Source of the DNA: Octopus sinensis
Taxonomy: Eukaryota
Reading direction: 5' to 3'
Assembly: GCF_006345805.1 (NCBI RefSeq)
Contig: NC_042998.1
Coordinates: forward strand, 89,962,001 to 90,026,000
DNA length: 64,000 bases
The position numbers and the translations under genes were made by a program. The notes beneath the pieces were generated by a model that did no database searches, was not told where the DNA came from, and was given only the letters and a program-made list of their open reading frames with translations. This document shows, one piece after another, positions 14,387 through 61,300 of this stretch (within the stretch, counting starts at the first letter, position 1; every line of letters begins with the position of its first letter).

Positions 14387-14973
14387 TACTCTAGGCACAA
14401 AGACTGGAATTTTTAGGGAGGAGGCCAGCCGATTAAATCGACCCCTGTACGCAACAGGTACTTATTTAATCGACCCCGAAAGGATGAAAGCAAAGTCGAA
14501 CTCGGTGGAATTTGAACTCAGAACGTATAGAGAGAGAGAGACGAAATACCTATTTCTATTTCTTTACTACCTACAAGGGGCTAAACACAGAGGGGACAAA
14601 CAAAGACAGACAAAGGGATTAAGTCGATTACATCGACCCCAGTGCGTAACTGGAACTTATTTAATCGACCCCGAAAGGATGAAAGGCAAAGTCGACCTCG
14701 GTGGAATTTGAACTCAGAACGTAACAGCAGACGAAATACCTATTTCTTTACTACCCACAAGGGGCTAAACACAGAGAGGACAAACAAAGACAGACAAACG
14801 GATTAAGTCGATTATATCGACCCAAGTGCGTAACTGGTACTTATTTAATCGACCCCAAAAGGATGAAAAGCAAAGTCGACCTCGGCGGAATTTGAACTCA
14901 GAACGTAACGGCAGGCGGAATACGGCTACGCATTTCGCCCGGCGTGCTAACGTTTCTACCAGCTCGCCACCTT
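14387..14973 (-). mobile_element. SINE with head-X-T-X-T-X-tail structure
   Basis: The ~124-bp body segment X occurs three times, separated by two copies of a ~60-66-bp segment T (14551-14616 and 14741-14800). Confidence 0.85.
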
Positions 14974-16049: not shown

Positions 16050-16722
16050 AGTTCTTGGGTTTTTGTTTAACCCACCGGTTTTTTCCGTTTTTTTCTTTAT
16101 TTTTTCCTCCTTTTTCGCCTTGACCGGCTACACTAGCACGGCCCTATTCACTCTCAACTTTCTTACAACAGTTATCCATCGTTTTCCGAACACACTTTGA
16201 GGCAGACACCTTCTCTCCAGACGGATCTTAACAGGTGGAAGTTGAAGTAACTTATCAACCTTTGTCTGGAGATAAAGAGGCCTGTCTCAATTCTTTTTGT
16301 ACGTGTCATCCATACTGTATCTTTCAGTATGGCTACTACGCAGAAAAAAGATGCCTTCCTTTCCTTGTTAAAGGAGGAAGGCGGTGCGATCTTAATCATG
16401 GACTCAGTCGAGAGCCGTACTCTTTCTGCATCCGACATCAGTTGTTCGACATAGGTTATCAATTCCCTCAGCTCCTCACAATGTGCGAAGTCGTGCGCGA
16501 CAGTTTCACTCGGGCGTGTGGGGGCGATGTCAAACCCGTGTCTCGACAACCTCTCTCGAACCGGCAAAGCCGATCGATAGCACAACCAAGCCAAGGTTGT
16601 CTGGAAGTTATCCAGATACCTCGGCCCGAATGTCCTTCCGGACAGGTTGGTTGGCTGCTCCTCATCGAAGCCTAGAGCCTCCCCTAGGACGTCGTCGGAC
16701 TCAAACTCTACCAACCCTCTGG
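16050..16722 (-). mobile_element. 5'-truncated Tx1-clade L1 fragment (ORF2 C-terminus and 3' UTR)
   Basis: ORF 16172-16714 (DDVLGEALGFDE...YLDNFQTTLAWLCYRSALPVRERLSRHG) is clearly homologous to the C-terminus of ORF2 at 53.8-54.4 kb. The 3' limit is approximate. Confidence 0.85.
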
Positions 16723-17014
16723 ATGGTTGTACATTTACAGATTTTTATTAATATGCCACATGTTTTTATAAATCATATATAATAGCGCTTGCATCTACTC
16801 TAGTAGATTCTTCAGATTTAAATTTGTTTGAGAGGATTCGTCTCTTTTTATAGTATTATTGAGTGTGTAGGGGTGGAGAGAGATATAGGATAGTAAAACA
16901 GGGTGAGGAATGGGGAGAAAGTGAGAAAGAGTGTGTGTGTTTGCGTGTGTGTGTATGTGTGTTTGTCTGTGTATCTGAAAGGAGTGTCAATGGAAAAGAG
17001 AAGGAAAAAGGTAA

Positions 17015-17751
17015 GACAACACTTTTTATTCTTGGAGCTGATCAGTGGCTTCACTGCAGGTGCTCTTGCTTGTAGGTCATGTTCAACTAAACGACGAGAC
17101 ACAGTTTTTCGAGATAAAGTTTTCTTCAATACAATGCTCATTTTCCGAGAAACAGCAGCAGCAGTTTTAAATCTGTCCTTTTTAACCAACTTTACCATAG
17201 CACGATCTTCTCTTTTGGTCGTTTTTCTTGGCCTACCTGTAAACTTTCTTGCTTCACACGAACCACAATCATCGTAGACCTTAAGAATACCGTGTACAAC
17301 ACTTTTTGACTTGTTAACAATCTTTCTTTGCAATAGATCCAATACTTAAATTATCCTTCCTTCGAAGCTTAATAATCTGCTGACGAATTGGTAACGGAGT
17401 AAGTGGCATTATATTAACAAAGTACACTGCAAATATTCTTACTAATATTTAGTAAACGAACCGTCACGTAAACAAATTCAAAACATTAGAGTTCGCCGGT
17501 TAAATATACTAAAACACGAAGTAAATTCAACCGTTCTGATCATTTTGGCCGCCATGGGTTTTGCAGTAAATCACTAAATTATCCATAACTTTTGTATTAT
17601 CCTCTCAAATTACACCAAAATCTCAGGCAATAACAAATGATATCGTATTTATTGTCTGTGAAAATTATAGAATATAAAACAACTTTGATAAAAAATTATA
17701 TCTTCTTTTCTGACGAAAACAATGCCGTTCTGAACATTTTGACCGCAACTG
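17015..17751 (-). mobile_element. Tc1-like transposon, 5' half with IR/DR-type ~220-bp TIR
   Basis: TIR starts CAGTTGCGGTCAAAATGTTCAGAACGG at 17751 after TA, with an inner direct repeat at ~17529-17552. Transposase N-terminus (GRPRKTTKREDR...TVSRRL) is in ORF 16848-17342. Confidence 0.9.
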
Positions 17752-17769
17752 TATATATATACTATATAT

Positions 17770-17811
<42 letters not shown>

Positions 17812-17839
17812 ATATATATATATTAATTTATATATATTA

Positions 17840-18223
17840 ATTATATATAGAGGGCATTATACATACATGCCAGAGGGCATTATACATACATGCCACACGC
17901 TAAGAGGGACAATTAGTCATTTCTACCAAAAATATTACTAATCCCACCGAATGCAATTTTTCAAAGTAAGACATTTAGAAAATATAGACCTGTATCACAG
18001 TGATTTCATACTTACGTATTCATCAGCAGGCCTGGATGTATCATAAATAAACGACCCTGTCCCGCTTAAGCCGATCAGCTAACTGATCAACATCAACGAA
18101 GCACATGGGTGAGATTACATATATTACATCCTGTAAATGGCATACTTTTACGAATTGCATTTCGGGAAAGGAAAAGTTTTTTCGGAATAAAAGTTTAGCA
18201 AGTAGTTGTCCTTAATTGCTAAA
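17840..18223 (-). mobile_element. Monomeric copy of the hammerhead-bearing (retrozyme-like) repeat
   Basis: Reverse-complement homolog of the 48259-49369 units, flanked by (TA)n on both sides, with an empty LINE target site. Confidence 0.85.
17986..18033 (-). ncRNA. Type I hammerhead ribozyme motif
   Basis: Minus strand: AGGCCUG CUGAUGA AUAC-GUAA-GUAU GAAA UCACUGUGA UA|CAGGUCU. All core nucleotides are present, stem II is a perfect 4 bp, and stem I has one G.U pair. Confidence 0.85.
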
Positions 18224-18225
18224 TC

Positions 18226-18256
<31 letters not shown>

Positions 18257-18359
18257 ATATAAGAAATGGAAAACAAAACAATATATTGAACAATTATAAA
18301 TTCAATTGAAATATTTTATACGAACAAATGGAAATGTATGTATATATACGTATATTTTT

Positions 18360-34565: not shown

Positions 34566-35915
<1,350 letters not shown>

Positions 35916-35930
35916 TTAGATAGATGGATG

Positions 35931-36005
<75 letters not shown>

Positions 36006-37334
36006 GAACAAATAGATAGGTAGAGAGAAGGGGTGGAAGTCCCTCCCACTTCAATTTTGACTTCCACTCATTTATTTATTTAGTCATTTACCATTCTATG
36101 GAAATAAGGTCAAGGATGGTGACCTCTCTAAGATATCAGTTCTAGGATGGGGTTGCTTTTCCTCTTTTTTTCTTTTTTCCGTGTTTTTTACCTTTTTCTT
36201 CGGGTGCCAGCGGTAAGATAAAAGGTTCAATGGAAATTTAAATATGTATGTGTGTGTGTATGTGTGTGTGTACGTGCGTGCGCGCTTACTTTTTTTCTGT
36301 TTACATCTGTTAACATGTTATAAGTAATTTTATGCATTTCCTAAATACCTTATTGGTTCCAAGAAATATTCAGGTAAATGGGTCTAAGAATGAGGTTAAT
36401 TGAATTAATGCCATTATGTTTATAGTTTCAGCCAAAAAGAAATGTATCTAACGGAGTAGCAATTTATGCTTGAAGTAACAAAAAATAATTTCCGGTCATC
36501 AAAGAAATCATGTTTTTCTCTGACATCTCGCTTCATTTAACAGAAAATTCATTGTAGAACTTAGCAATCTTCAACCTGCAGCTTTATTATCCTGCCTCAC
36601 ATCATTCAGTATGTGTTTGCATTAGTTGATAGGATAGGACTAGCTACCTTTTATCAACTGGGTACAGTAGAAAGGAAGAATACAAAAGAAAAGAAAACTT
36701 AGCTCGTGAAGTCCTCCCACTTAAAATATGTCCAGATACTTTCAATTAACATTGATTCTTAACATGGTTCTTCAATTTTTCAGGAAATAGTATTCACCGA
36801 TTATTTTGATCCCACTAGTATTTTGGAACTTCATTATATCGATACTAGAAGAATGAAAGGCAATGCTGACATCGACTGGATTTAAAATTCGAATATACTT
36901 ATACAACAGGATATTTCGTCCGACGCTCATACCATTTTGCTAACTGCTCCCCCCACCACCATACTGATTTCTAACAGGCCACAGGTTTTGTGTGAGGAGT
37001 ATCATTGATCATGAAAATTACAGAAGCTTTCTCTACAATTGATTTCTTGATTCAGTCACAATGTCACTTTTATATATTTAGGAGAAATGATATTATGTAA
37101 CGTTCACAACATCTTTAGCAGTTAAAGTGTGATGAAATGGCTTTAGCCAAATATTGAAACCGATAAAACTGCTTGAGGATTCGGCTCTGTTGAAGCTTAA
37201 TTCTTGTTGTGTAACATTCTCTATTACAGTTTCCTTATTTTGATATTTGATCAATTTTTCAGTTATCTCCAGCAAGTTCAAACTTGTATCAGTTAATGTT
37301 TGGTGTGAAATTGTATGCACAGAAGGAGTAAAAC

Positions 37335-47322: not shown

Positions 47323-48223
47323 TGAGGTGGTATCAAAACCTTCGCTGACTATTCCTATAGCGCGCCAACAGATGGCATCATATAGTTGCATGCGGAGTGA
47401 GAGCTAGCAGTGACCTTCATGAAGCAGTATGTCGAGTGACGTCGCTGTGTTTATTTCGCAAGTTGTAAAAATCGTCATTTTGTGATCACGTGTATGCTGT
47501 GGTCTATGATTTTGTCGTGGACAGGAACAGAGAGCCAACGTGAAACTTTGGGAAGTTTGCTACAGAGACATTGAGCATGCTTTGGCAAGCTTACGGTGAC
47601 GAGGCAACGGGTTCTAAGCAAGGTTTCGAGTGGCACACGCGCTTTAAAAGCAGGAGAAAGTCCCTGAAAGATTATGAGCGATCTGAAAGACCTGCCACGA
47701 GCATCACACCCGGAAATGTGGTATTCTACATCGAAAATTCATCCCCCAGGGCCAGACCGTCAATCGAGAGTTCTACTGCGACGTTTTGAAGGGTTTGAGG
47801 GACGACATTCAGCAAAAGCGATCGGAGCTGTGGAGCATGAAGAATTGGATTCTTCATGAGATAGTGCACCGTCACCGACCTCTCCTCACTTGCGAGTTTC
47901 TCACCAAAAACAACATGGAATTGCTTCTGCACCCACCCTATTCGTCAGATTTAGCACCTGTGGTCTTCCATCTCCAAGATGAAAATGCAACTCAAAGGTT
48001 GCCGTTTTAACAACGTTGTCGAGACCCAGAACGAATCGCAGAAGATTCTCGACTCGCTTACGGGAAACGACTTCCAGGCCGGATTCCAAAAGTAGCAAAA
48101 ACACTGGGAGCAGTATTCTGCTGCACAAGGTGACTATTTGGAAGGAAATTATGTTAAAACTTAGGTAAATAAGTTATTTTTTATTAAACATAACTACTCC
48201 GGGAACCTTTTGACACCACCTCG
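47323..48223 (+). mobile_element. Defective mariner-like transposon
   Basis: TIRs TGAGGTGGTATCAAAACC / GGAACCTTTTGACACCACCTCG with TA flanks. Remnants QGFEWHTRFKSRR and HPPYSSDLAPVVF (ORFs 47571-47789 and 47786-48010). Confidence 0.9.
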
Positions 48224-48261
<38 letters not shown>

Positions 48262-48431
48262 CAAAATTTTTATTCCGAAAAAACTTTTCTCTCCCGAAAT
48301 GCAATTTTGTAAAAGTTTGCCATTCACCCGGATGATATATATAAACTCACCCATGTGCTTCGTTGTTGATGTTGATCAGTTAGATGTTCGGCTTAAGCGA
48401 GGCAGGGTCGTTGTTTATTTATAATACATTC

Positions 48432-48477
48432 AGGCCTGCTGATGATTACGTAAGTATGAAATCACTGTGATACAGGC
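48432..48477 (+). ncRNA. Type I hammerhead ribozyme motif (unit 1)
   Basis: AGGCCUG CUGAUGA UUAC-GUAA-GUAU GAAA UCACUGUGA UA|CAGGC; predicted cleavage after 48472. Confidence 0.8.
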
Positions 48478-48911
48478 TATAATTTTTAAATGTCTTACTT
48501 TGAAAAATTGCATCGGTGGGATTAGTAATATTTTTGGTGATAGAAATGACTGATTGTCCCTCTTAGCGTTTGGCAGGTATTATAATGCCTCCTGGCATGT
48601 ATGTATAATTATGCCCTCTATATATAATTATATGTTCAATAAGAAATAATTATTTTCGAAATTTTTTCTCTTATGAGGTTTTTACGCTATCTACCGACAA
48701 TTTTTGTTAAGTTTTCCTTATTAAGTAGTTGTCCTTAATTGCAAAATTTTTATTCCGAAAAAACTTTTCCTCTCCCGAAATGCAATTTTGTAAAAGTTTG
48801 CCATTCACCCGGATGTAATATATATAAACTCACCCATGTGCTTCGTTGATGTTGATCAGTTAGATGTTCGGCTTAAGCGAGGCAGGGTCGTTGTTTATTT
48901 ATAATACATTC

Positions 48912-48959
48912 AGGCCTGCTGATGATTACGTAAGTATGAAATCACTGTGATACAGGCCT
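48912..48959 (+). ncRNA. Type I hammerhead ribozyme motif (unit 2)
   Basis: Same motif with the full 7-bp stem I (AGGCCUG/CAGGCCU); predicted cleavage after 48952. Confidence 0.85.
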
Positions 48960-49558
48960 ATATATTTTTAAATGTCTTACTTTGAAAAATTGCATTTGGG
49001 TGGGATTAGTTAGTAATATTTTGTAGAAATGACTGATTGTCCCTCTTAGCGTTTGGCAGGTATATATAATGCCTCCTGGCATGTATGTATAATTATGCCC
49101 TCTATATATAAATTAATATGTTCAATAAGAAATAATTATTTTCGAAATTTTTTCTCTTATGAGGTTTTTACGCTATCTACCTGACAATTTCTTGTTAAGT
49201 TTTCCTTATTAAGTAGTTGTCCTTAATTGCAAAATTTTTATTCCGAAAAAACTTTTCCTCTCCCGAAATGCAATTTTGTAAAAGTTTGCCATTCACCCGG
49301 ATGTAATATATATAAACTCACCCATGTGCTTCGTTGATGTTGATCAGTTAGCCGTCATTTGCGGAGCAGTTTGTTGCGTTTTGCGTTGTGTGAGAAATTT
49401 GCTGCTGCTATTTAAGAGAATTCGAAGTTATAATATCATTGTTTGTGTAAACTGTTCTGAACAGTACCCGTCGTAAAACGATAATTTTCGCCCTACGGGG
49501 GGCAGAAAATTTTGTTGTTCTAACCATATTCTTGTTACTTTAAAGGTAACCTTCAGAG

Positions 49559-50989
49559 ATGGAGTTCGACCTAACGTCGAAGGAAGACTTTCCCGTGATG
49601 GGAAAAGGTGAAAAAAAGAGGAAAACCCAGTACCCAGGCAATCATTCTCGGCCGCGGTGGGCGGCGCCATGTTGGAGATAGAATTCAAGATTGAACAACT
49701 GTACGAATATAGGAATTTGGTAAAACTAGAAAGAAGGAGGAGAAATAAGGCTTGTGCCGCCGCAAGCGAAGGTGCAAGAAATTAGGAAAAGATCGTAATC
49801 TATAAAGTGTACAACTTTAAAGAAAAAAAGATCATGGAAGTAAAAAACGAAACCGTTGAGAAATGCTTGGCCCCGGTGTGGGATAAAATTCGCCATATAG
49901 TGAGAGGTGCACGGAAGTGCCACGATCGAAGCACACTTTGACACGGCAGAGGTGGCGAAGGAGGAGGTGTCGTCGTTGACCCTTAAAAACGACGACATCA
50001 TGCTGCTACCCTCGTATATGGGGAAGAGAACCGCAAAGGTAACGGTTGAAGACATACCCAGAGGATACGACACCATGTGGGTAGCAGCGGCGGTCTTCAT
50101 GATGTAGAACGCGAAATGAACATACTGCAAATGAGAAGGAAGGAAGCGGTACGTTGGAGGGGTCAGACTCTGGAGCTCCTCGTACAGGCAGAGAACAAGA
50201 TCTTGGAGAGCCTGCCTGACAGGATTTTTAACGAGGATGGCACGTCCATGAGAGTGTCGGTGGAAGGACGAAGACCCAGATGCTTCAAGTGTGGAGAAAA
50301 GGGTCACGTCCGTTCCAATTGCATCAGAAAAAAAAGAACAGAAGATGCGGCCCCTCCAAGTGTACCTAATGCGGAGGGAGAGGAAGCTAAGAAGAACAAC
50401 AAAACGACCAAGACAAATACGGAAGCAAAAATAGACCAAATAGAACCGATGGAATACACCCAAGTTACGCACAAAAGAAAAAAAGAAAATACCCTGGACT
50501 CCCCTCCCCAAACAAGGAAAAAAACAACTAGCACTACAGACACACACATTAAGCAAATCCCCCAACCCTACCCCCATGGCACTGTTTTCATTGGAAAACA
50601 GTTTGCCAAACCCCTCCCCGTAAAACAAGATCCAAAAAATGTTATTGAAAAACGAAAAAATAATTGCGTTTGATGAAAAAAACGAAAAAGTTTACAAATG
50701 CTGCAAACTGTCGAGGTTTATGCTGTATAGCAGAACCTCAGATGGAAAAGCAATTGCGCGCTTCGCCAAGGTAGGCGAGAACGAATGGAAGGAGGAGGTT
50801 CTTCAGGAACACCTGAAGAACCGCCTAATAAGAGATGTCACCAAAGAGGTGTTAGAAGGAAAACTAACAATAACCCCGGCAACCACACCAACCCAGAGCC
50901 CAGTGGCAACGCCGGTCAAAAGCCCTGCAGTAGCGGAAGAAAGGGAAGCAGGCAAAATTAGACCGCCGTGCTCCCTTTCACAAACGTGA
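49559..50989 (+). CDS. LINE ORF1 (gag-like, zinc knuckle), frameshifted in this sequence
   Basis: Starts MEFDLTSKEDFPVMG; contains CFKCGEKGHVRSNC (CX2CX4HX4C); pieces in ORFs 49907, 50077 and 50639. Confidence 0.8.
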
Positions 50990-51017
50990 GTATAGTTATT
51001 TCTCTCCCTCGCTCACA

Positions 51018-54000
51018 ATGGCCAAGCTGGGCTGCCTAAACATACGTGGAATGGGGTCGAAATGGAAACAAATTTGTTTCCTGAACGACCTCACGACACA
51101 AGGTATAGATGTTGCTATCGTAACCGAGTCCAAGATGAGCGAGACCCAAGCGTTCTCACCTCTTCTAAATGGTTTCGAGAAATTTATTTCTCCTAGCCGA
51201 GGAGGAGGAAGAGGCGTGGCAGTCTTCATCAGGAAGAGCTTGGACCTGCAGGTAAGTACTGTCTTTCTGGACCCAGAAGGCAGGCTGGTTGTCCTGGATG
51301 TGACTCACGCAAGTAAACAGTCCTTCAGGTTGGTAGCTGTCTACGCCCCGAACGAGGGTAGACAGTTGGGTTTCTTTCGAAGCCTGGAGCCCTTTCTGGC
51401 GACGTCGAAAACAGTAATACTAGTAGGGGACTTTAACACTGTCCTTGAAGCGCACATCGACAGTGTTGGCTCAACTAATAGGAAGGGGAATCCTAGCCTC
51501 AAGGGTCTACTGGAGAGAGCTTTGATCTAGTGGACCGTTACCGACTGGATGAGCCGAGCGTTCCACAGTGGACGTGGAGTAACTACGACGGCTCACACAG
51601 ATCGTACCTAGATAGGATAATTATAAAAAAAAGAGATAAGGATACGTTTAGTTGTCCACAATTTCATATTGTACCTTACTCGGATCACAAGTTTGTGACG
51701 TGTGAGGTGCAATTAGACAAGTGTCATAGACAGGGACCCGGGTACTGGAAGCTGAACAAGGCTATTTTGAATTGTGAAGACTTCCGTACCGGATTAAGGA
51801 GTTAGTTCAGAGGGCATTGTGCGGCACCGTCATTAACAATAGATGTGTGGCACGCCCTCAAAAGAGCCATTCGATTAGAGTCCGTTAGATTTAGCAATCA
51901 GATAAGGATAGATAGAGCTAGTCTAGAGGGCGATTTAGTTAAGAATCTAGACGAGGCAATGGAAGCTGGCTCTGCATCCGGAGTACTGGCGGCAAGGACG
52001 GTATTGTACCGACACCTTGACTCCAAACACGAAGGTTGCAGAGTCAGAGCTAAGCTGCGCGCCGGGAAACGAGAAGGTGTTAACGTAGCCGGATGGGCCC
52101 GTCGTGTCGGTGGAGAGTAAGAGAGGCAACAGAGCCTCAATAAAATCTTTGACTGGCGAACAGGGACAAAAGATCTATGGACAGGAGGAGATGCAAAAGT
52201 TTCTTCACCAGCATTTCGCGCGCGCGTTCGGGGTGGGTGGCCCGCTGGACCGGGGGAGTGCCTTAAGGGACTTCCTGGCCGGCGGGCCGCGGCTCGCGGG
52301 GCGTGAGGCGGAGTGCTGTGAAGGAGCGATCACTCCCGCGGAAATAAGGGAAGTGCTGGCCGAGTGCGCCGGGGAGAAATCGCCGGGGCTGGATGGTCTG
52401 CCCTACGAGTTTTACCAAAATATGCCGGATTTGTTCGGGGGAATACTGGCAGGCGTCTACACGAACTGGCAGCAGAACGGGAGAATTCCCAGTTCTGTAA
52501 GCGGGGGGGTGGACGCTAATCCAGAAAGACCCGAGCAAAGGGGATATGATTAGTAACTACAGGCCCATAACTCTACTTAATGTAGAGTTAAAGATTTTGG
52601 CCAAGGTGTTAGCAAAAAGGTTGACGGTTGTCGTGGAGAAACTTGTAGGGAGAGCACAGACATGTGCAATTCCAGGCAGGTCGATCCAGGACAACCTTCA
52701 CCTTATACGCTACACCTTAGATAGGGTGGGTAAAGTAACCGGCAAAGGTGGGGTAATGGTCCACTTGGACCAAAGTAAAGCCTTCGATAGGGTAGACCAT
52801 GGGTACCTGGCGGCGGTCCTCGAAGCGACCGGACTGGGTCCCGAATTCGCGGGTGGATCTCCGCTATGTACAGCGGCATCAAGTCCACCGTCCAGATAAA
52901 CGGTTACCTAACAGAACCGTTTTCGATCGAATGTTCAGTACGTCAGGGGTGCCCCTTGTCACCACTTTTGTACGTATTGGCTCTCGAGCCACTACTGCGA
53001 AGGTTGGAGAGGCTGGGGAGTAACTCAGATGGAATCGGAGGTGGGAGGTCGGTCACTGCCTATGCGGATGACATCACCCTCATCGTGTCCAAGGAGGCCC
53101 AACTACCTGGTGTAGAGGAGGCTATCAGAGGATACGAGGCGGTGGCAGGAGCAAAGGTTAACAGGGACAAATCGGTCGGCTTGCGCCTCGGCACCTGGAG
53201 GAACAAGCCGATATTGTCCAGTGTTGGGGACACTGGACGGATGGCCCTGTTAAGTTGCTGGGAGTCTGGTTTGGACCGGACTCCCAAACGGAGAAGAACT
53301 GGAGCGAGGTGACGGGCAAGGTGGAGGCCATAATACGGACCTGGTCCGGAAGGTCTCTGTCCTTGAAAGGAAGGGCGGAGGTGGCGCAGATGTTTATTGC
53401 ATCCGTAATCACCTACCGCCTGACCGTCGTCCCTTGCCCCGACTCATGGCTTAACAAGTTGGAACGAGCCTCTTCCGCTTTTTGTGGAAAGGAGGAAAGC
53501 CACTTGTGAGACGCTCCGTGTGCTGTCAAGAACCGTTAAAGGGTGGGTTAGGGATGCCTTGGTTAATGATGCGCAGACATGCGTTGAGACTAAGACATCT
53601 CTGGCACCACCTGGAAGGTGATAAGGTGTGGAGTCCGTTGGCAGAGGGATTTTTTCCGAGACCGGCCTCCTTAGTTAATTTTAAACCCGGTTACATCAGA
53701 AGATGCAATCTGACTCCATGGCAAAAGGAGTGCCGACAGGCACTCACGCTGATCCACAAGGCGGGCAAGGCCGGCTGCGGAAATACCACCTCGGTATTTT
53801 ATAGAGGGCTGGTAGAAGGTAAAAACGATGACGTCCTAGGAGGGGCTCTGGGGTTTGATGAAAACCAGCTTGCCAATCTGTTTAAGAAAACGTTCAGGTC
53901 GGGGTATTTGGATAATTTCCAAAGATCCCTGGCTTGGCAGTGCTACAGGAATGCTTTACCTGTTCGCGAAAAGTTATCACGGCACGGAGTTCCAGTGCCA

Positions 54001-54512
54001 CCGACGTGTCAAAGATGCGGGCTGGACGATGAAACCGTTCAGCACGCTTTTTTTCATTGTCGGAAGTTGAACGACTTGATAAGTTACGCAGAACACGTGT
54101 TATCGCATTGGGACGAGTACAGCTGTCGGCTGAGTCTATGATTAAGATGATACCGCCAACTGGACTCTCGAAGGAAGGTGAGGCATGTTTTCACTGCACG
54201 GTTGCAGTGGTAAAGGAATGCATGTGGAGAACGAGAATGGAAGGAACCGCGACAGGGTCATTTGTCTCCGGGCCCGGCTTGCTCACCTACTTCAGATATC
54301 ATCTGAGAAGCAAGAGGGACTGGAGAGGAGGACCCTGCCGCGGGGAGTGTATGCGAATAGATGGAAGAAGTGGAAGTGGAAAGAAAGGTGGGTACGAGAA
54401 GGCCAGCTTGACCATGGAGGAGAGAGAGGAAGTGGAAGCTGCAGGGCCTCAACAATTGCCGGGGTGTGAAAGCTCGAGTATAATCACAAAGGTCAGCTAC
54501 AAGTGTTTGTAA
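51018..54512 (+). CDS. LINE ORF2 (APE endonuclease, reverse transcriptase, C-terminal CCHC), frameshifted in this sequence
   Basis: LNIRG, VYAP, GDFN, SDHK (APE); SPGLDGLPYEFY, YRPITLLN, LDQSKAFDRVDH, RQGCPLSP, AYADD (RT); CQRC...ETVQHAFFHC. The exact stop is uncertain (54411 or 54512). Confidence 0.9.
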
Positions 54513-54653
54513 CACTAGTTACGAAAAAACTATTACTTATAACGAATACAAACGAAACTTTTTTTAATCGATTCTCTTAAATTTTCTTGTATGTATGTAT
54601 GTCCTGTATTCGTCCTTTCTATGTATTAATTTTTATAATTGTAATAAAGAAAT

Positions 54654-54689
54654 TGTTGATCAGTTAGCTGTTCGGCTTAAGCGAGGCAG
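54654..54689 (+). repeat. 36-bp target-site segment between the two LINE copies
   Basis: TGTTGATCAGTTAGCTGTTCGGCTTAAGCGAGGCAG. Also present at 60024-60059, in the empty units (~48850-48885) and degraded at 49339-49369. Confidence 0.9.
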
Positions 54690-54870
54690 TTTGTTGCGTT
54701 TTGCGTTGTGAGAAATTGCTGCTGCTATTTGAGAGAATTCGAAGTTATAATATCATTGTTTGTGTAAACTGTTCTGAACAGTACCCGTCGTAAAACGATA
54801 ATTTTCGCCCTACGGGGCAGAAAATTTTGTACTAACCATATTCTTGTTACCTTAAAGGTAACTTTCAGAG

Positions 54871-56313
54871 ATGGAGTTCGACCTGACGTCGAAGGAGGAC
54901 TTTCCCGTGATGGGAAAAGGTGAAAAAAGAAGAGGAAAATCAAGTACCCAGGCAATCATTCTCGGCCGCGGTGGGCGGCGCCATGTTGGAGATAGAATTC
55001 AAGATTGAACAACTGTACGATATAGGAATTTGGTAAAACTAGAAGGAGGAGAAATAAGGCTTGTGCCGCCGCAAGCGAAGGTGCAAGAAATTAAGGAAAA
55101 GATCGTAATCTATAAAGTGTACAACTTTAAAGAAAAAAAGATCATGGAAGTATAAAAACGAAACCGTTGAGAAATGCTTGGCCCCGGTGTGGGATAAAAT
55201 TCGCCATATAGTGAGAGGTGCACGAAGTGCCACGATCGAAGCACACTTTGACACGGCAGAGGTGGCGAAGGAGGTGTCGTCGTTGACCCTTAAAAACGAC
55301 GACATCATGCTGCTACCCTCGTATATGGGGAAGAGAACCGCAAAGGTAACGGTTGAAGACATACCCAGAGGATACGACACCATGTGTGGGTAGCAGCGGC
55401 GGTCTTACATGATGTGGAACGCGAAATGAACATACTGCAAATGAGAAGGAAGGAAGCGGTACGTTGGAGGGGTCAGACTCTGGAGCTCCTCGTACAGGCA
55501 GAGAACAAGATCTTGGAGAGCCTGCCTGACAGGATTTTTAACGAGGATGGCACGTCCATGAGAGTGTCGGTGGAAGGACGAAGACCCAGATGCTTCAAGT
55601 GGTGGAGAAAAGGGTCACGTCCGTTCCAATTGCATCAGGAAAAAAAGAACAGAAGATGCGGCCCCTCCAAGTGTACCCAATGCGGAGGGAGAGGAAGCGA
55701 GAGGAAGCTAAGAAGAACAACAAAACGACCAAGACAAATACGGAAGCAAAAATAGACCAAATAGAACCGATGGAATACACCCAAGTTACGCACAAAAGAA
55801 AAAAAGAAAATACCCTGGACTCCCCTCCCCAAACAAGGAAAAAAACAACTAACACTGCAGACACACACATAAAACAAATCCCCCAACCCTACCCCCACGG
55901 CACTGTTTTCATTGGAAAACAGTTTGCCAAGCCCCTCCCCGTAAAACAAGATCCTAAAAAATGTTTATTGAAAAATGAAAAAATAATTGCGTTTGATGAA
56001 AAAAACGAAAAAGTTTACAAATGCTGCAAACTGTCGAGGTTCATGCTGTTATAGCAGAACCTCAGATGGAAAAGCAATTGCGCGCTTCGCCAAGGTAGGC
56101 GAGAACGAATGGAAGGAGGAGGTTCTTCAGGAACACCTGAAGAACCGCCTAATAAGAGATGTCACCAAAGAGGTGGTTAGAAGGAAAACTAACAATAACC
56201 CCGGCAACCACACACCCCAGAGCCCAGTGGCAACGCCGGTCAAAGGCCCTGCAGTAGCGGAAGAAAGGGAAGCAGGCAAAATCAGACCGCCGTGCTCCCT
56301 TTCACAAACGTGA
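54871..56313 (+). CDS. LINE ORF1, copy 2 (frameshifted)
   Basis: Homologous to 49559-50989. Confidence 0.75.
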
Positions 56314-56342
56314 GTATAGTTATTTTTCCTCCCTCGCCCACA

Positions 56343-59300
56343 ATGGCCAAGCTGGGCTGAAACCTAAAAATACGTGGAATGGGGTCGAAATGGAAACAAA
56401 TTTGTTTCCTGAACGACCTCACGACACAAGGTATAGATGTTGCTATCGTAACCGAGTCCAAGATGAGCGAGACCCAAGCGTTCTCACCTCTTCTAAATGG
56501 TTTCGAGAAATTTTTTCTCCTAGCGGGAGGAGGAGAAGAGGCGTGGCAGTCTTCATCAGGAAGAGCTTGGACCTGCAGGTAAGTACTGTCTTTCTGGACC
56601 CAGAAGGCAGGCTGGTTGTCCTGGATGTGACTCACGCAGTAGTAACAGTCCTTCAGGTTGGTAGCTGTCTACGCCCCGAACGAGGGTAGGGTAGACAGAC
56701 GGGTTTCTTTCGAAGCCTGGAGCCCTTTCTGGCGACGTCGAAAACAGTAATACTAGTAGGGGACTTTAACACTGTCCTTGAAGCGCACATCGACAGTGTT
56801 GGCTCAACTAATAGGAAGGGGAATCCTAGCCTCAAGGGTCTACTGGAGAGCTTTGATCTAGTGGACCGTTACCGACTGGATGAGCCGAGCGTTCCACAGT
56901 GGACGTGGAGTAACTACGACGGCTCACACAGATCGTACCTAGATAGGATAATTAAAAAAAAAAGAGATAAGGATACGTTTAGTTGTCCACAATTTCATAT
57001 TGTACCTTACTCGGATCACAAGTTTGTGACGTGTGAGGTGCAATTAGACAAGTGTCATAGACAGGGACCGGGTACTGGAAGCTGAACAAGGCTATTTTGA
57101 ATTGTGAAGACTTCCGTACCCGGATTAAGGAGTTAGTTCAGAGGGCATTGTGCGGCACCGTCATTAACAATAGATGGTGGCACGCCCTCAAAAGAGCCAT
57201 TCGATTAGAGTCCGTTAGATTTAGCAATCAGATAAGGACAGATAGAGCTAGTCTAGAGGGCGATTAGTAAGAATCTAGACGAGGCAATGGAAGCTGGCTC
57301 TGCATCGGAGAAGGCGGAAGGTGGAGCTTTATCCGACCTTGGCGGCAAGGACGGTATGTACCGACACCTTGACTCCAAACACGAAGGTTGCAGAGTCAGA
57401 GCTAAGCTGGCGCCGGGAAACGAGAAGGTGTTAACGTAGCCGGATGGGCCCGTCGTGTGGAGAGTAAGAGAGGCAACAGAGCCTCAATAAAATCTTTGAC
57501 TGGCGAACAGGGACAAAAGATCTATGGACAGGAGGAGATGCAAAAGTTTCTTCACCAGCATTTCGCGCGCGCGTTCGGGGGGGGGGTGGTGGCCCGCTGG
57601 ACCGGGGGAGTGCCTTAAGGGACTTCCTGGCGGCGGGCCGCGGCTCGCGGGGCGTGAGGCGGAGTGCTGTGAAGGAGCGATCACTCCCGCGGAAATAAGG
57701 GAAGTGCTGGCCGAGTGCGCCGGGGAGAAATCGCCGGGGCTGGATGGTCTGCCCTACGAGTTTTACAAAATATGCCGGATTTGTTCGGGGGAATACTGGC
57801 AGGCGTCTACACGAACTGGCAGCAGAACGGGAGAATTCCCAGTTCTGTAAGCCGGGGAGTGGTGGACGCTAATCCAGAAAGACCCGAGCAAAGGGGATAT
57901 GATTAGTAACTACAGGCCATAACTCTACTTAATGTAGAGTTAAAGATTTTGGCCAAGGTGTTAGCAAAAAGGTTGACGGTTGTCGTGGAGAAACTTGTAG
58001 GGAGAGCACAGACATGTGCAATTCCAGGCAGGTCGATCCAGGACAACCTTCACCTTATACGCTACACCTTAGATAGGGTGGGTAAAGTAGTAACCGGCAA
58101 AGGTGGGGGGTAATGGTCCACTTGGACCAAAGTAAAGCCTTCGATAGGGTAGACCATGGGTACCTGGCGGCGGTCCTCGAAGCGACCGGACTGGGTCCCG
58201 AATTCCGCGGGTGGATCTCCGCTATGTACACGCGGCATCAAGTCCACCGTCCAGATAAACGGTTACCTAACAGAACCGTTTTCGATCGAATGTTCAGTAC
58301 GTCAGGGGTGCCCCTTGTCACACACTTTTGTACGTATTGGCTCTCGAGCCACTACTGCGAAGGTGGAGAGGCTGGGGAGTAACTCAGATGGAATCGGAGG
58401 TGGGAGGTCGGTCACTGCCTATGCGGATGACATCACCCTCATCGTGTCCAAGGAGGCCCAACTACCTGGTGTAGAGGAGGCTATCAGAGGATACGACGGT
58501 GGCAGGAGCAAAGGTTAACAGGGACACAATCGGTCGGCTTGCGCCTCGGCACTGGAGGAACAAGCCGATATTGTCCAGTGTTGTGGGACACTGGACGGAT
58601 GGCTGCCTGTTAAGTTGCTGGGAGTCTGGTTTGGACCGACTCCCCGGAGCCAACGGAGAAGAACTGGAGCGAGTGACGGGCAAGGTGGAGGCCATAATAC
58701 GGACCTGGTCCGGAAGGTCTCTGTCCTTGAAAGGAAGGGCGGAGGTGGCGCAGATGTTTATTGCATCCGTAATCACTACCGCCTGACCGTCGTCCCTTGC
58801 CCCGACTCATGGCTTAACAAGTTGGAACGAGCCCTCTTCCGCTTTTTGTGGAAAGGAGGAAAGCCACTTGTGAGACGCTCCGTGTGCTGTCAAGAACCGT
58901 TAAAGGGTGGGTTAGGATGCCTTGGTTAATGATGCGCAGACATGCGTTGAGACTAAGACATCTCTGGCACCACCTGGAAGGTGATAAGGTGTGGAGTCCG
59001 TTGGCAGAGGGATTTTTTCCGAGACCGGCCTCCTTAGTTATAATTTTAAACCCGGTTACATCAGAAGATGCAATCTGACTCCATGGCAAAAGAGAGTGCC
59101 GACAGGCACTCACGCTGATCCACAGGACGGGCAAGGCCGGCTGCGGAAATACACCTCGGTATTTTATAGAGGGCTGGTAGAAGGTTAAAAACGATGACGT
59201 CCTAGGAGGGGCTCTGGGGTTTGATGAAAACCAGCTTGCCAATCTGTTTAAGAAAGAAAACGTTCAGGTCGGGGTATTTGGATAATTTCCAAAGATCCCT

Positions 59301-59882
59301 GGCTTGGCAGTGCTACAGGAATGCTTTACCTGTTCGCGAAAAGTTATCACGGCACGGAGTTCCAGTGCCACCGACGTGTCAAAGATGCGGGCTGGACGAT
59401 GAAACCGTTCAGCACGCTTTTTTTCATTGTCGGAAGTTGAACGACTTGATAAGTTACGCAGAACACGTGTTATCGCATCTGGGACGAGTACAGCTGTCGG
59501 CTGAGTCTATGATTAAGATGATACCGCCAACTGGACTCTCGAAGGAAGGTGAGGCATGTTTTCACTGCACGGTTGCAGTGGTAAAGGAATGCATGTGGAG
59601 AACGAGAATGGAAGGAACCGCGACAGGGTCATTTGTCTCCGGGCCCGGCTTGCTCACCTACTTCAGATATCATCTGAGAAGCAAGATGGGACTGGAGAGG
59701 AGGACCCTGCCGCGGGGAGTGTATGCGAATAGAGAAGGAAGGGAAGTGGAAAGAAAGGTGGGTACGAGAAGGCCAGCTTGACCATGGAGGAGAGAGAGGA
59801 AGTGGAAGCTGCAGGGCCTCAACAATTGCCGGGGTGTGAAAGCTCCAGTATAATCACAAAGGTCAGCCACAAGTGTTTGTAA
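56343..59882 (+). CDS. LINE ORF2, copy 2 (frameshifted)
   Basis: Homologous to 51018-54512; same APE, RT and zinc finger motifs in ORF pieces 56379-59781. Confidence 0.85.
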
Positions 59883-60022
59883 CACTAGTTACGCAAAAAC
59901 TATTACTTATAACGAATACAAACGAAACTTTTTTTAATCGATTCTCTTAAATTTTCTTGTATGTATGTATGTCCTGTATTCGTCCTTTCTATGTATTAAT
60001 TTTTATAATTGTAATAAAGAAA

Positions 60023-60273
60023 GTGTTGATCAGTTAGATGTTCGGCTTAAGCGAGGCAGGGTCGTTGTTTATTTATAATACATTCAGGCCTGCTGATGAT
60101 TACGTAAGTATGAAATCACTGTGATACAGGCCTATATATTTTTAAATGTCTTACTTTGAAAAATTGCATTCGGTGGGATTAGTAATATTTTTGGTAGAAA
60201 TGACTGATTGTCCCTCTTAGCGTTTGGCAGGTATATATAATGCCTCCTGGCATGTATGTATAATTATGCCCTC

Positions 60274-60278
<5 letters not shown>
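60023..60278 (+). repeat. Remainder of array unit 3, ending in (TA)n
   Basis: Resumes at the target segment and continues exactly as units 1 and 2 to TGCCCTCTATATAT. Confidence 0.9.
60086..60133 (+). ncRNA. Type I hammerhead ribozyme motif (unit 3, downstream of the LINEs)
   Basis: AGGCCUG CUGAUGA UUAC-GUAA-GUAU GAAA UCACUGUGA UA|CAGGCCU; predicted cleavage after 60126. Confidence 0.85.
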
Positions 60279-60314
<36 letters not shown>

Positions 60315-61300
60315 TATATATACATATATACATACATACATACATACATATATATATATATACACACACACACAGAAAGAGAGAGAGACGTGCATGTATA
60401 TACATTTGCATACACACGGACAAAGACATACACAATCAACCGTTGAATCACACTCTACCATCTTAAATAATAAGGATCTACTTGACGATGAAAAAAAAAG
60501 AAAAAACAGATGCTAACAGCTAAAATGTTTTTTTTTTCTGATAGATTATTACAACCAAGAATGATCTGGAACTACAAATCATACGCAAACATTCATAAAA
60601 TATCTCACAAGTCCCATATCACGAAAAAAAAGTGTGGGAAAGTCATTTAAGTTTCTGAACTCTTGATTACAGTTTTTCAAATTAAATACAGTTTTAATGA
60701 ATAGATGAATATAATCAAGGACTTTTCTTTTTAATTTTTATTTAATATTTTTGAATCTTTCGAAATGCTAATTACAAAAAAAAAAAAAACAGATTTCTTT
60801 CGAATAATAAAAATATAATTTGCTGTTCGCGTCATCAACTTTGTTCCGAAATCCTTGTTTTCCACCATCACATTTCTTACCACCTCAGAGAAAAATCTCT
60901 TAATCTCTTTAACCTGGCATGCTTATTTGTGGAACAGAAGGTCACCTTGTCATGTATAGTTGCTATAATTGTCAGTAGACTAGAACACTTTAAGATTTCG
61001 CTGACGTTTATTCTTTATAAAGCACAATTTCGGGTTAATCTAATGACTGGGTGGTTTGTTCAGGCATTTTTTATTTAACACTAGTTTCCTGATAGTTGGC
61101 CACCGGGAAAAGGAGTTCATGCGTTGCTCTCTATTTCCCTGGGTTCAACAACGAAACATGTGCACTTTTGCAGAAGATTAAAAAGGAATAGAAGAATTAA
61201 AATTGAAAATAAGAACGACCCTGTAACCATTGGGGTGGATGTGGATAGGTTCAGACTAAACCCGATGTGTGTCTGCATGCTAATATAATTATTATCAAAG

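What the first reader, a model, noticed from the sequence alone, without database searches (positions are those of the whole stretch)
48259..60278. A Tx1-clade LINE that appears to target a hammerhead-ribozyme (retrozyme) array
Seen: a 480-bp tandem repeat with type I hammerheads is interrupted in unit 3 by two full-length L1/Tx1 copies at one position. The same site is empty in units 1 and 2 and in the monomer at 18.05-18.09 kb. Known: Tx1-clade LINEs are often site-specific (Xenopus Tx1L/Tx2L in Tx1D/Tx2D, Keno in U2 snRNA, Dewa in tRNA arrays, Kibi/Koshi in microsatellites). Animal non-LTR retrozymes are non-autonomous hammerhead tandem repeats whose mobilising RT is not firmly assigned. 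Inference: a two-component system in which the LINE parasitises the ribozyme repeat and may also supply the RT that spreads it. I do not know of a described Tx1 family with this target, but I cannot search the literature.
Basis: partly seen in the sequence, partly recalled or inferred. Interest (0 to 1): 0.92.

Follow-up and report, generated by a model that had tools for sequence, protein, structure and literature searches.

The report
LINE pair inside a hammerhead repeat
Two copies of an L1/Tx1-type jumping gene sit head to tail at exactly the same base of a hammerhead-ribozyme repeat in an octopus-like genome. This hints at, but does not prove, site-specific insertion, and nothing suggests the jumping gene spreads the repeat.

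Summary
A 480/488-bp tandem repeat (48260-49351, resuming at 60024-60290) carries one minimal type I hammerhead motif per unit. My descriptor scan finds exactly four hits in the window, against 0.01 expected by chance; Rfam models find none. Unit 3 is split at unit position 110/111 by two head-to-tail ~5.3-kb LINEs (49352-54652 and 54690-60022). Each has an ORF1 CCHC knuckle, an AP endonuclease, an L1-like RT and a zf-RVT domain. The same site is empty in units 1 and 2 and in a solo monomer (17834-18200, minus strand).

Targeting rests on this one locus. Two insertions at the same nick fit the structure. So does one insertion followed by a microhomology (GCAG) tandem duplication. The differing junction base (T vs G) mildly favours two events. 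No other copy of this LINE family could be reached, so genome-wide flanks remain untested.

The idea that the LINE supplies the RT is not supported. The LINE and the repeat share no significant 3' tail. All three repeat loci lie inside (TA)n tracts, and the window array is a partial tandem while the solo copy carries an inverted terminal piece, as described for Penelope-like elements, which the literature names as the likely mobilisers.

Tx1 families that target satellites and other transposons are already known. At best this is a new member of a known kind.

The parts
48224..48258 (.). (TA)n tract flanking the array on the left
   Evidence: TRF; sequence
48260..48739 (+). Repeat unit 1 (480 bp). 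The LINE site at 48369|48370 is empty.
   Evidence: blastn, nhmmer, sequence
48740..49227 (+). Repeat unit 2 (488 bp). The LINE site at 48849|48850 is empty.
49228..49351 (+). Repeat unit 3, positions 1-124. Its last 14 bp (49338-49351, TGTTGATCAGTTAG) form the upstream copy of the target-site duplication of LINE copy 1.
48433..48478 (+). Minimal type I hammerhead motif in unit 1. Predicted cleavage after A48472.
   Evidence: descriptor scan; pair counts
48912..48959 (+). Minimal type I hammerhead motif in unit 2. Predicted cleavage at 48952|48953, 103 nt downstream of the LINE site.
49352..54652 (+). LINE copy 1 (5301 bp). 5' UTR to about 49558. ORF1 about 49559-50989, with a CCHC knuckle. 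ORF2 51018-54512 (APE, RT, zf-RVT), with at least 8 frame breaks. 3' UTR ends in AATAAAGAAA with no poly(A).
54653..54653 (+). Extra base T between the tail of LINE copy 1 and the target sequence
   Evidence: sequence
54654..54689 (+). 36-bp copy of unit positions 111-146, lying between the two LINEs. It has C instead of A at unit position 125.
54690..60022 (+). LINE copy 2 (5333 bp). It lacks the first 18 nt of copy 1 and is more heavily frameshifted.
60023..60023 (+). Extra base G between the tail of LINE copy 2 and the target sequence
   Evidence: sequence
60024..60290 (+). Repeat unit 3, positions 111-380. The first 36 bp repeat 54654-54689.
60086..60133 (+). Minimal type I hammerhead motif in unit 3, starting 64 nt after the 3' end of LINE copy 2
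60274..60362 (.). (TA)n tract flanking the array on the right
   Evidence: TRF
17834..18200 (-). Solo monomer (unit positions 1-380, 89% identity to unit 2). The LINE site is empty (14-mer at 18079-18092). The monomer lies between (TA)n tracts at 17752-17849 and 18226-18261.
17986..18033 (-). Hammerhead motif of the solo monomer, with an A-U pair at 10.1/11.1 where the array copies have U.U

Best explanation
The host is an octopod cephalopod. The 480/488-bp repeat is a retrozyme-like, non-autonomous element. Each unit carries one minimal type I hammerhead, and the unit RNA is strongly self-paired on the hammerhead strand. Its genomic habit matches Penelope-like-element integration: it lies inside (TA)n microsatellites, forms a partial tandem, and has an inverted terminal piece next to the solo copy.

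A ~5.3-kb L1-superfamily LINE of the Tx1 type is a parasite of this repeat. Its AP endonuclease nicks the bottom strand at 5'-GATCAACA|TCAACG-3', which is unit position 110/111 and 62 nt upstream of the hammerhead. Target-primed reverse transcription then places the LINE in the sense orientation of the ribozyme.

This most likely happened twice at the same nick. One copy is full length with a 14-bp duplication. The other is 5'-truncated by 18 nt, joined through GCAG microhomology, and has a 36-bp duplication. That pattern implies a sequence preference for this site.

Shown: the anatomy, the protein domains, the junctions and the empty sites. Inferred: two independent events, site preference, and Penelope-like-element mobilisation of the repeat. 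The LINE is not the repeat's mobiliser.
For: Anatomy and junctions.

Host: the closest proteins are from Octopus sinensis (73%), O. bimaculoides (71%) and Argonauta hians (53-59%). A copy of the unit (80-92% identity) lies in O. sinensis locus L005.

LINE class:
- zf-CCHC in ORF1; Exo_endo_phos, RVT_1 and zf-RVT in ORF2.
- The best solved relatives are human L1 EN and L1 ORF2p. The first RT piece scores E 2e-10 against L1 and 2e-5 against R2.
- In O. vulgaris, L1-Tx1 is the only L1-type group annotated as recently active, at about 5.4 kb per insertion (PMC13282606).
- RRM/CCHC ORF1 variants fit the Tx1 clade (PMC5203782).

Same-nick junctions: the tail AATAAAGAAA, then one base (T or G), then TGTTGATCAG in both copies. 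The differing base sits exactly where independent insertions are expected to vary. Under duplication it would need one of only 66 substitutions in 5239 bases to fall on that base.

Site properties: the nick site is not the T-rich L1 consensus, and the LINE has no poly(A). A relative in Argonauta sits in a head-to-tail chain of SINEs and LINEs inside (ATT)n tails, so target-directed insertion occurs in this lineage.

Repeat:
- Hammerhead descriptor hits occur only in the four unit copies.
- The monomer RNA folds with z = -5.8 on the plus strand against -2.8 on the minus strand.
- All repeat ends abut (TA)n, while only 4.6% of the window lies within 30 bp of such a tract.
- PLE traits are as described in PMC8557442.
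Against: - There is only one occupied locus. Nothing else of this LINE family is in the window or in any reachable collection.
- A tandem duplication of the segment from LINE base 19 to unit base 146, with GCAG microhomology, reproduces the structure exactly.
- Two differences in the 37-bp junction block are only weakly more than expected (about 0.47 expected, P about 0.08).
- The assembly looks error-prone here, with an indel-to-substitution ratio near 1:1.
- Tx1 placement was not tested by phylogeny.
- Rfam models do not recognise the hammerhead, the array copies have a U.U at 10.1/11.1, and there is no covariation.
- No octopus Penelope-like-element sequence was compared with the repeat.
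Confidence: 0.55

Rival explanations
1. One chance LINE insertion (14-bp duplication) into the repeat was followed by a microhomology-mediated tandem duplication of about 5.37 kb. There is no target specificity.
For: Duplicating the segment from LINE base 19 to unit base 146 gives exactly the observed order, with GCAG at both breakpoints. It explains the identical 3' junction position without any specificity. The repeat covers only about 3% of the window, so one chance hit is not remarkable once a scan selects odd loci.
Against: The junction base differs (T vs G) and unit base 125 differs (C vs A) between the two supposed duplicates, although the copies differ by only about 1.2% in substitutions. 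The nick site is unlike the L1 T-rich consensus in a 63% A+T genome. Relatives in Argonauta show target-directed head-to-tail insertion.
Confidence: 0.3
2. One reading: the LINE both parasitises the hammerhead repeat and supplies the RT that spreads it, as a LINE does for a partner SINE.
For: The LINE and the ribozyme share a strand, so co-transcription is possible. A relative in Argonauta does have a SINE partner with a shared tail. NAR 2020 left LINEs open as candidate mobilisers (PMC7229834).
Against: The LINE 3' tail has no significant match in the unit: 316 of 1000 shuffles score as well on the plus strand. The LINE's 5' leader match to the unit is weak. The repeat integrates into (TA)n at 3 of 3 loci whereas the LINE integrates into the repeat, so the two have different target choices. 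The partial tandem and the inverted terminal piece fit Penelope-like elements (PMC8557442). Current literature points to PLEs (10.64898/2026.07.22.740005).
Confidence: 0.07
3. Assembly artefact: a false tandem duplication or mis-join in a noisy long-read assembly created the second LINE copy or the LINE-array contiguity.
For: There are 63 indel events against 66 substitutions between the copies. 29 of 38 single-base indels lie in homopolymers, which is typical of unpolished long-read consensus.
Against: The junctions are clean. They carry a target-site duplication and 4-nt microhomology, which a spurious overlap would not produce. Copy 1 has 18 nt that copy 2 lacks. Flanking unit sequence is present on both sides in register.
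Confidence: 0.08

Closest known systems
Tx1L in Tx1D (Xenopus laevis) and other target-specific Tx1-clade LINEs: Keno (U2 snRNA), Kibi/Koshi (microsatellites), Tx1-Mar (a Mariner family), and families listed with satellite, Harbinger and LTR targets (PMC4494074)
   Same: An L1-type LINE with an AP endonuclease and a CCHC-bearing ORF1. It is inserted at one defined position of another repeated element, in a fixed orientation, with no poly(A) tail. A head-to-tail second copy sits at the regenerated site.
   Different: The target here is a hammerhead-bearing retrozyme-like repeat. I found no description of such a target. Specificity rests on one locus, and clade membership by RT phylogeny is untested.
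Animal non-LTR retrozymes (Cervera and de la Pena 2020, PMC7229834) and the minimal type I hammerheads of Penelope-like elements
   Same: A low-GC tandem repeat with one type I hammerhead per unit and a strongly self-paired unit RNA. Helix III is short and nearly palindromic (AUCACUGUGAU), so it could pair as a dimer. The repeat lies in (TA)n, and the window array is a partial tandem while the solo copy carries an inverted terminal piece.
   Different: The unit (480-488 nt) is longer than the reported 170-400 nt. The array copies have U.U at 10.1/11.1. Rfam models do not score the motif. Expression, cleavage and circular RNA are untested. I found no report of such repeats in cephalopods.
R2 elements, which are co-transcribed with 28S rRNA and freed by their own HDV-like ribozyme (from my own knowledge)
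   Same: A site-specific LINE in the sense orientation of a transcribed repeat, with a self-cleaving ribozyme near its ends.
   Different: Here the ribozyme belongs to the target, not to the LINE. It lies about 390 nt upstream and about 64 nt downstream of the LINE ends. No ribozyme was found at the LINE 5' end. Any role in processing is pure inference.

Membership tests
L1 superfamily, Tx1 clade LINE | ORF2 with an N-terminal AP endonuclease, an L1-like RT and a C-terminal Cys-rich (zf-RVT) domain | tested here: met
   PF03372, PF00078 (two pieces) and PF13966. L1 EN and L1 ORF2p are the best solved relatives.
L1 superfamily, Tx1 clade LINE | ORF1 of the RRM/CCHC (Type I-like) kind rather than the mammalian coiled-coil Transposase_22 kind (PMC5203782) | tested here: met
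   zf-CCHC at E 2e-4, above the Pfam cut-off. No RRM and no Transposase_22 were detected. ORF1 is frameshifted.
L1 superfamily, Tx1 clade LINE | The RT domain groups with Repbase Tx1 references in a phylogeny (RTclass1) | not testable with these tools
   No Tx1 reference sequences are at hand. The only indirect support is that L1-Tx1 is the only L1-type group annotated as active in O. vulgaris, at about 5.4 kb per copy (PMC13282606).
L1 superfamily, Tx1 clade LINE | Sequence-specific insertion: most copies share the same flanks | tested here: inconclusive
   Two of two copies are at the same base, but duplication is not excluded. No other copy was found in the window, in related loci or in metagenome contigs.
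Animal non-LTR retrozyme | Short tandem DNA repeats (reported 170-400 bp), low GC, no LTR/PBS/PPT | tested here: met
   2.3 units plus a split third unit. GC is about 0.37 for 48-50 kb. The unit is 480-488 bp, above the reported range.
Animal non-LTR retrozyme | A type I hammerhead in each unit | tested here: inconclusive
   The full conserved core and three helices are present in all four copies, against 0.01 expected by chance, with 93% of cells paired. However, Rfam models are silent, the array copies have U.U at 10.1/11.1, and there is no covariation.
Animal non-LTR retrozyme | The unit RNA is highly self-paired | tested here: met
   The monomer between cleavage sites folds at -125 kcal/mol with z = -5.8. 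The opposite strand gives z = -2.8.
Animal non-LTR retrozyme | Expressed, self-cleaved and circularised RNA | not testable with these tools
   No transcriptome or bench data are available.
Non-autonomous derivative of a Penelope-like element | Insertion bias for microsatellites such as (TA)n, with partial tandem and inverted structures (PMC8557442) | tested here: met
   The array, the solo copy and the O. sinensis copy all lie within (TA)n. Only 4.6% of the window lies within 30 bp of such a tract. An inverted 18-nt terminal piece lies upstream of the solo copy.
Non-autonomous derivative of a Penelope-like element | Sequence similarity to the terminal repeat of an autonomous Penelope-like element of the same genome | not tested
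LINE/SINE-type partnership between this LINE and the repeat | A shared 3' tail between the non-autonomous element and the LINE | tested here: not met
   Local alignment of the last 80 nt of the LINE to the unit scores 22-23 against a shuffle mean of about 20. 316 and 133 of 1000 shuffles do as well.

The most novel reading that the evidence does not exclude
An L1-Tx1 family whose obligate home is one position of a hammerhead retrozyme, and which borrows that host. The LINE would be transcribed by read-through from the repeat. The flanking hammerheads (about 390 nt upstream and about 64 nt downstream) would trim the co-transcript. The retained downstream target sequence would then guide priming at the next empty unit. 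This would be an R2-like ribozyme dependence, but using the target's ribozyme.
Probability: 0.1. Interest if true: 0.75.

Novelty: new member of a known kind. Interest (0 to 1): 0.35.

Why it matters
If genome-wide flanks confirm it, this would add a hammerhead retrozyme to the list of Tx1 targets. It would give a clean nested-parasite case: a LINE living in a repeat that is itself probably a parasite of Penelope-like elements. It would also document retrozyme-like hammerhead repeats in cephalopods, which I did not find reported. It does not open the question of which RT moves animal retrozymes, because the evidence here points away from the LINE.

Tried and rejected
- Rfam at gathering and permissive thresholds, on the whole window, on 13.5 kb and on 131 nt: no hammerhead or other ribozyme. 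I therefore used my own descriptor with a random control.
- The three protein searches and ten contig look-ups reached only relatives at 73% identity or less. These were an internal 1-kb LINE fragment in O. sinensis, a truncated copy in O. bimaculoides, a full relative in Argonauta, and copies in an unnamed ENA assembly. None is informative on this family's flanks, and none lies next to a hammerhead.
- An exact scan of metagenome contigs with the LINE's last 23 nt gave three chance A+T-rich hits of 23-30 nt. A viral-contig scan with the hammerhead core gave none.
- The idea that the first 18 nt of LINE copy 1 are target-derived (similar to unit 125-146) gets weak support only: 152 of 5000 shuffles, and 81 of 5283 LINE 18-mers, score as well. 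nhmmer extends the unit alignment over these bases. I kept this as a lead, not a finding.
- The apparent resemblance of the unit stretch CAATAAGAAATAATTATT to LINE tails is not significant for the window's LINE.
- Pfam did not confirm a suspected mariner remnant at 47.6-48.2 kb.


Full report
**What is there**

The window is A+T-rich and crowded with microsatellites. The host is probably an octopod. The closest relatives of its LINE proteins come from Octopus sinensis (73% identity), O. bimaculoides (71%) and Argonauta hians (53-59%). A copy of the repeat unit at 80-92% identity lies in an O. sinensis chromosome, in locus L005. No near-identical protein exists in the searched collection, so the host species itself is not represented there.

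TRF finds a 488-bp period at 48259-49351. blastn and nhmmer resolve the layout as follows:
- unit 1: 48260-48739
- unit 2: 48740-49227
- unit 3, positions 1-124: 49228-49351
- LINE copy 1: 49352-54652
- one extra T: 54653
- 36 bp of unit (positions 111-146): 54654-54689
- LINE copy 2: 54690-60022
- one extra G: 60023
- unit positions 111-380: 60024-60290

(TA)n tracts flank the whole structure on both sides. A solo monomer (unit positions 1-380, 89% identity) lies on the minus strand at 17834-18200. The 14-mer TGTTGATCAGTTAG that borders the LINEs is uninterrupted in unit 1, in unit 2 and in the solo copy.

**The hammerhead**

Rfam finds nothing, even at E up to 10 on a 131-nt slice. By hand, the unit reads:

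GGCCUG / CUGAUGA / UUAC-GUAA-GUAU / GAA / AUCA-CUG-UGAU / A | CAGGCC

This contains every conserved core base of a type I hammerhead, with open helix I and short helices II and III. A descriptor scan finds this motif at exactly four places, which are the three array units and the solo copy. Random sequence of the same composition gives 0.01 hits per 64 kb.

The four copies give 93% paired cells, against 22-41% when the partners are slid, but they show no covariation. The array copies have U.U at the 10.1/11.1 pair, while the solo copy has A-U. Helix III (AUCACUGUGAU) is nearly palindromic. From my own knowledge, this is the dimer-prone, minimal look of hammerheads in Penelope-like elements and amphibian retrozymes.

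The monomer RNA between predicted cleavage sites (48473-48952) folds with z = -5.8. The opposite strand gives z = -2.8. The repeat is therefore retrozyme-like, but ribozyme activity is untested.

**The LINE**

Both copies carry the following domains:
- an ORF1 with a CCHC knuckle
- an AP endonuclease (PF03372)
- an RT (PF00078)
- a zf-RVT domain (PF13966)

Human L1 EN and L1 ORF2p are the best solved relatives. The first RT piece scores E 2e-10 against L1 and 2e-5 against R2. The 3' end is AATAAAGAAA with no poly(A).

In O. vulgaris, L1-Tx1 is the only L1-type group listed among recently active LINEs: 13 families and 421 insertions covering 2.29 Mb, or about 5.4 kb each (PMC13282606). CCHC-type ORF1 variants are described as consistent with the Tx1 clade (PMC5203782). 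I could not run an RT phylogeny, so Tx1 is likely but not demonstrated.

Both copies are broken by many frameshifts. They differ by 66 substitutions and 63 indel events, and 29 of the 38 single-base indels lie next to the same base. That ratio looks like long-read consensus error, so the elements may be intact in the animal.

**One site, two copies**

Both 3' junctions read tail, one base, then TGTTGATCAG. The bottom-strand nick is therefore at 5'-GATCAACA|TCAACG-3' in both cases. This is not the T-rich L1 consensus.

Copy 1 has a 14-bp duplication and 18 extra 5' bases (CCGTCATTTGCGGAGCAG). Copy 2 starts at TTTGTTGCG, directly after a 36-bp copy of the target that ends in GCAG. GCAG is also the sequence of bases 15-18 of copy 1. 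Two readings fit this structure:
- **(i) Two target-primed insertions at the same nick.** The second copy would be joined at its 5' end through GCAG microhomology.
- **(ii) One insertion followed by a tandem duplication.** The duplicated segment would run from LINE base 19 to unit base 146, again with GCAG microhomology.

Reading (ii) needs substitutions at the junction base (T vs G) and at unit base 125 (C vs A). About 0.47 differences are expected in that 37-bp block, giving P about 0.08 for two. The junction base is exactly where independent insertions are expected to vary. I therefore favour reading (i), but only moderately.

An assembly artefact is unlikely, given the clean duplications and the microhomology.

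**Does the family target the repeat?**

I could not test this beyond the window.
- The window has no other copy of the family; the LINE fragments at 16.4 and 35.2-36.1 kb are only 67-69% identical.
- The O. sinensis and O. bimaculoides relatives are internal or truncated fragments.
- The metagenome scan gave only chance A+T-rich matches.

One supporting observation comes from the Argonauta relative. It sits in a head-to-tail chain: SINE, (ATT)3, a LINE 3'-UTR fragment, (ATT)17, 2.3 SINE units, a full LINE, then (ATT)4. There the SINE and the LINE share the tail GGCTAATA[A/G]AGAAAT. Target-directed, head-to-tail insertion therefore occurs in this lineage.

**Does the LINE move the repeat?**

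The evidence says no.
- The LINE tail has no significant counterpart in the unit, and the 5' leader similarity is weak.
- All three loci of the repeat lie inside (TA)n tracts, whereas only 4.6% of the window lies within 30 bp of such a tract.
- The window array is a partial tandem of about 2.8 units.
- The solo copy has an 18-nt piece of the unit's other end in inverted orientation just upstream.

Microsatellite bias, including (TA)n, and tandem or inverted insertion structures are described for Penelope-like elements, which occur in Octopus (PMC8557442) and are recently active in O. vulgaris (PMC13282606). NAR 2020 calls Penelope-like elements a strong candidate for retrozyme mobilisation (PMC7229834). 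A 2026 preprint argues that animal retrozymes derive from their terminal repeats (10.64898/2026.07.22.740005).

**Comparison and novelty**

Tx1-clade families with preferred targets in satellites, piggyBac, Mariner and Harbinger transposons, LTR elements, snRNA genes and microsatellites are already catalogued (PMC4494074). A Tx1-type LINE nested in another repeat is therefore a known kind. The new element would be the target. A full-text search for Tx1 together with hammerhead found nothing relevant, and I found no report of hammerhead repeats in cephalopods.

The LINE lies on the ribozyme's strand, with hammerheads about 390 nt upstream and about 64 nt downstream. Co-transcription and ribozyme trimming are therefore conceivable, but nothing here tests them.

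**Verdict**

Site preference is plausible at about 0.55. RT supply by the LINE is unlikely, at about 0.07. Interest is modest until genome-wide flanks are tabulated.

Noticed in passing
window 17834-18261: An 18-nt piece of the unit's far end (GTAGTTGTCCTTAATTGC, unit 468-488) lies inverted just upstream of position 1 of the solo monomer, at about 18203-18222. The other end of the monomer carries a 23-bp direct duplication (17849-17895). The inverted piece recalls the inverted 5'-truncated copies described next to Penelope-like-element insertions.
   Followed up: partly
window 48224-48258, 60274-60362, 17752-17849, 18226-18261; L005 12850-13300: Every end of every copy of the hammerhead unit (the array, the solo copy and the O. 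sinensis copy) abuts a (TA)n tract. The O. sinensis copy covers unit positions 220-488 and is itself split by a SINE.
   Followed up: partly
L001 4700-11210 (Argonauta hians): A head-to-tail chain of SINE, LINE 3'-UTR fragment, 2.3 tandem SINE units (157 bp) and a full-length LINE, all separated by (ATT)n. The SINE and the LINE share the tail GGCTAATA[A/G]AGAAAT, which points to a LINE/SINE partnership with insertion into (ATT)n tails.
   Followed up: partly
window 49352-60022: The two LINE copies differ by about as many indel events (63) as substitutions (66), and most single-base indels lie in homopolymers. This pattern suggests long-read consensus error, so the frameshifts may not be biological.
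   Followed up: partly
window 14430-14923: A 184-bp SINE-like unit occurs in 2.6 tandem copies at 88% identity. ARAGORN calls no tRNA anywhere in the window.
   Followed up: no
window 16848-17342 (-) and 47570-48222: A Tc1/mariner transposase HTH (PF01498) ORF lies next to the solo monomer. A possible decayed mariner remnant (PPYSSDLAP-like motif) ends right at the (TA)n that starts the array, but Pfam did not confirm it.
   Followed up: partly
window 35226-36067 (-) and 16380-16720 (-): Fragments of other LINE families, 67-69% identical to the LINE studied; RVT_1 is detected at 35627-36067. They are not associated with the hammerhead unit.
   Followed up: no
L005 10001-10453 (Octopus sinensis): The RefSeq protein named 'secreted RxLR effector protein 78-like' is a fragment of a LINE reverse transcriptase (PF00078, 73% identical to the window's RT piece). 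The name is misleading.
   Followed up: yes
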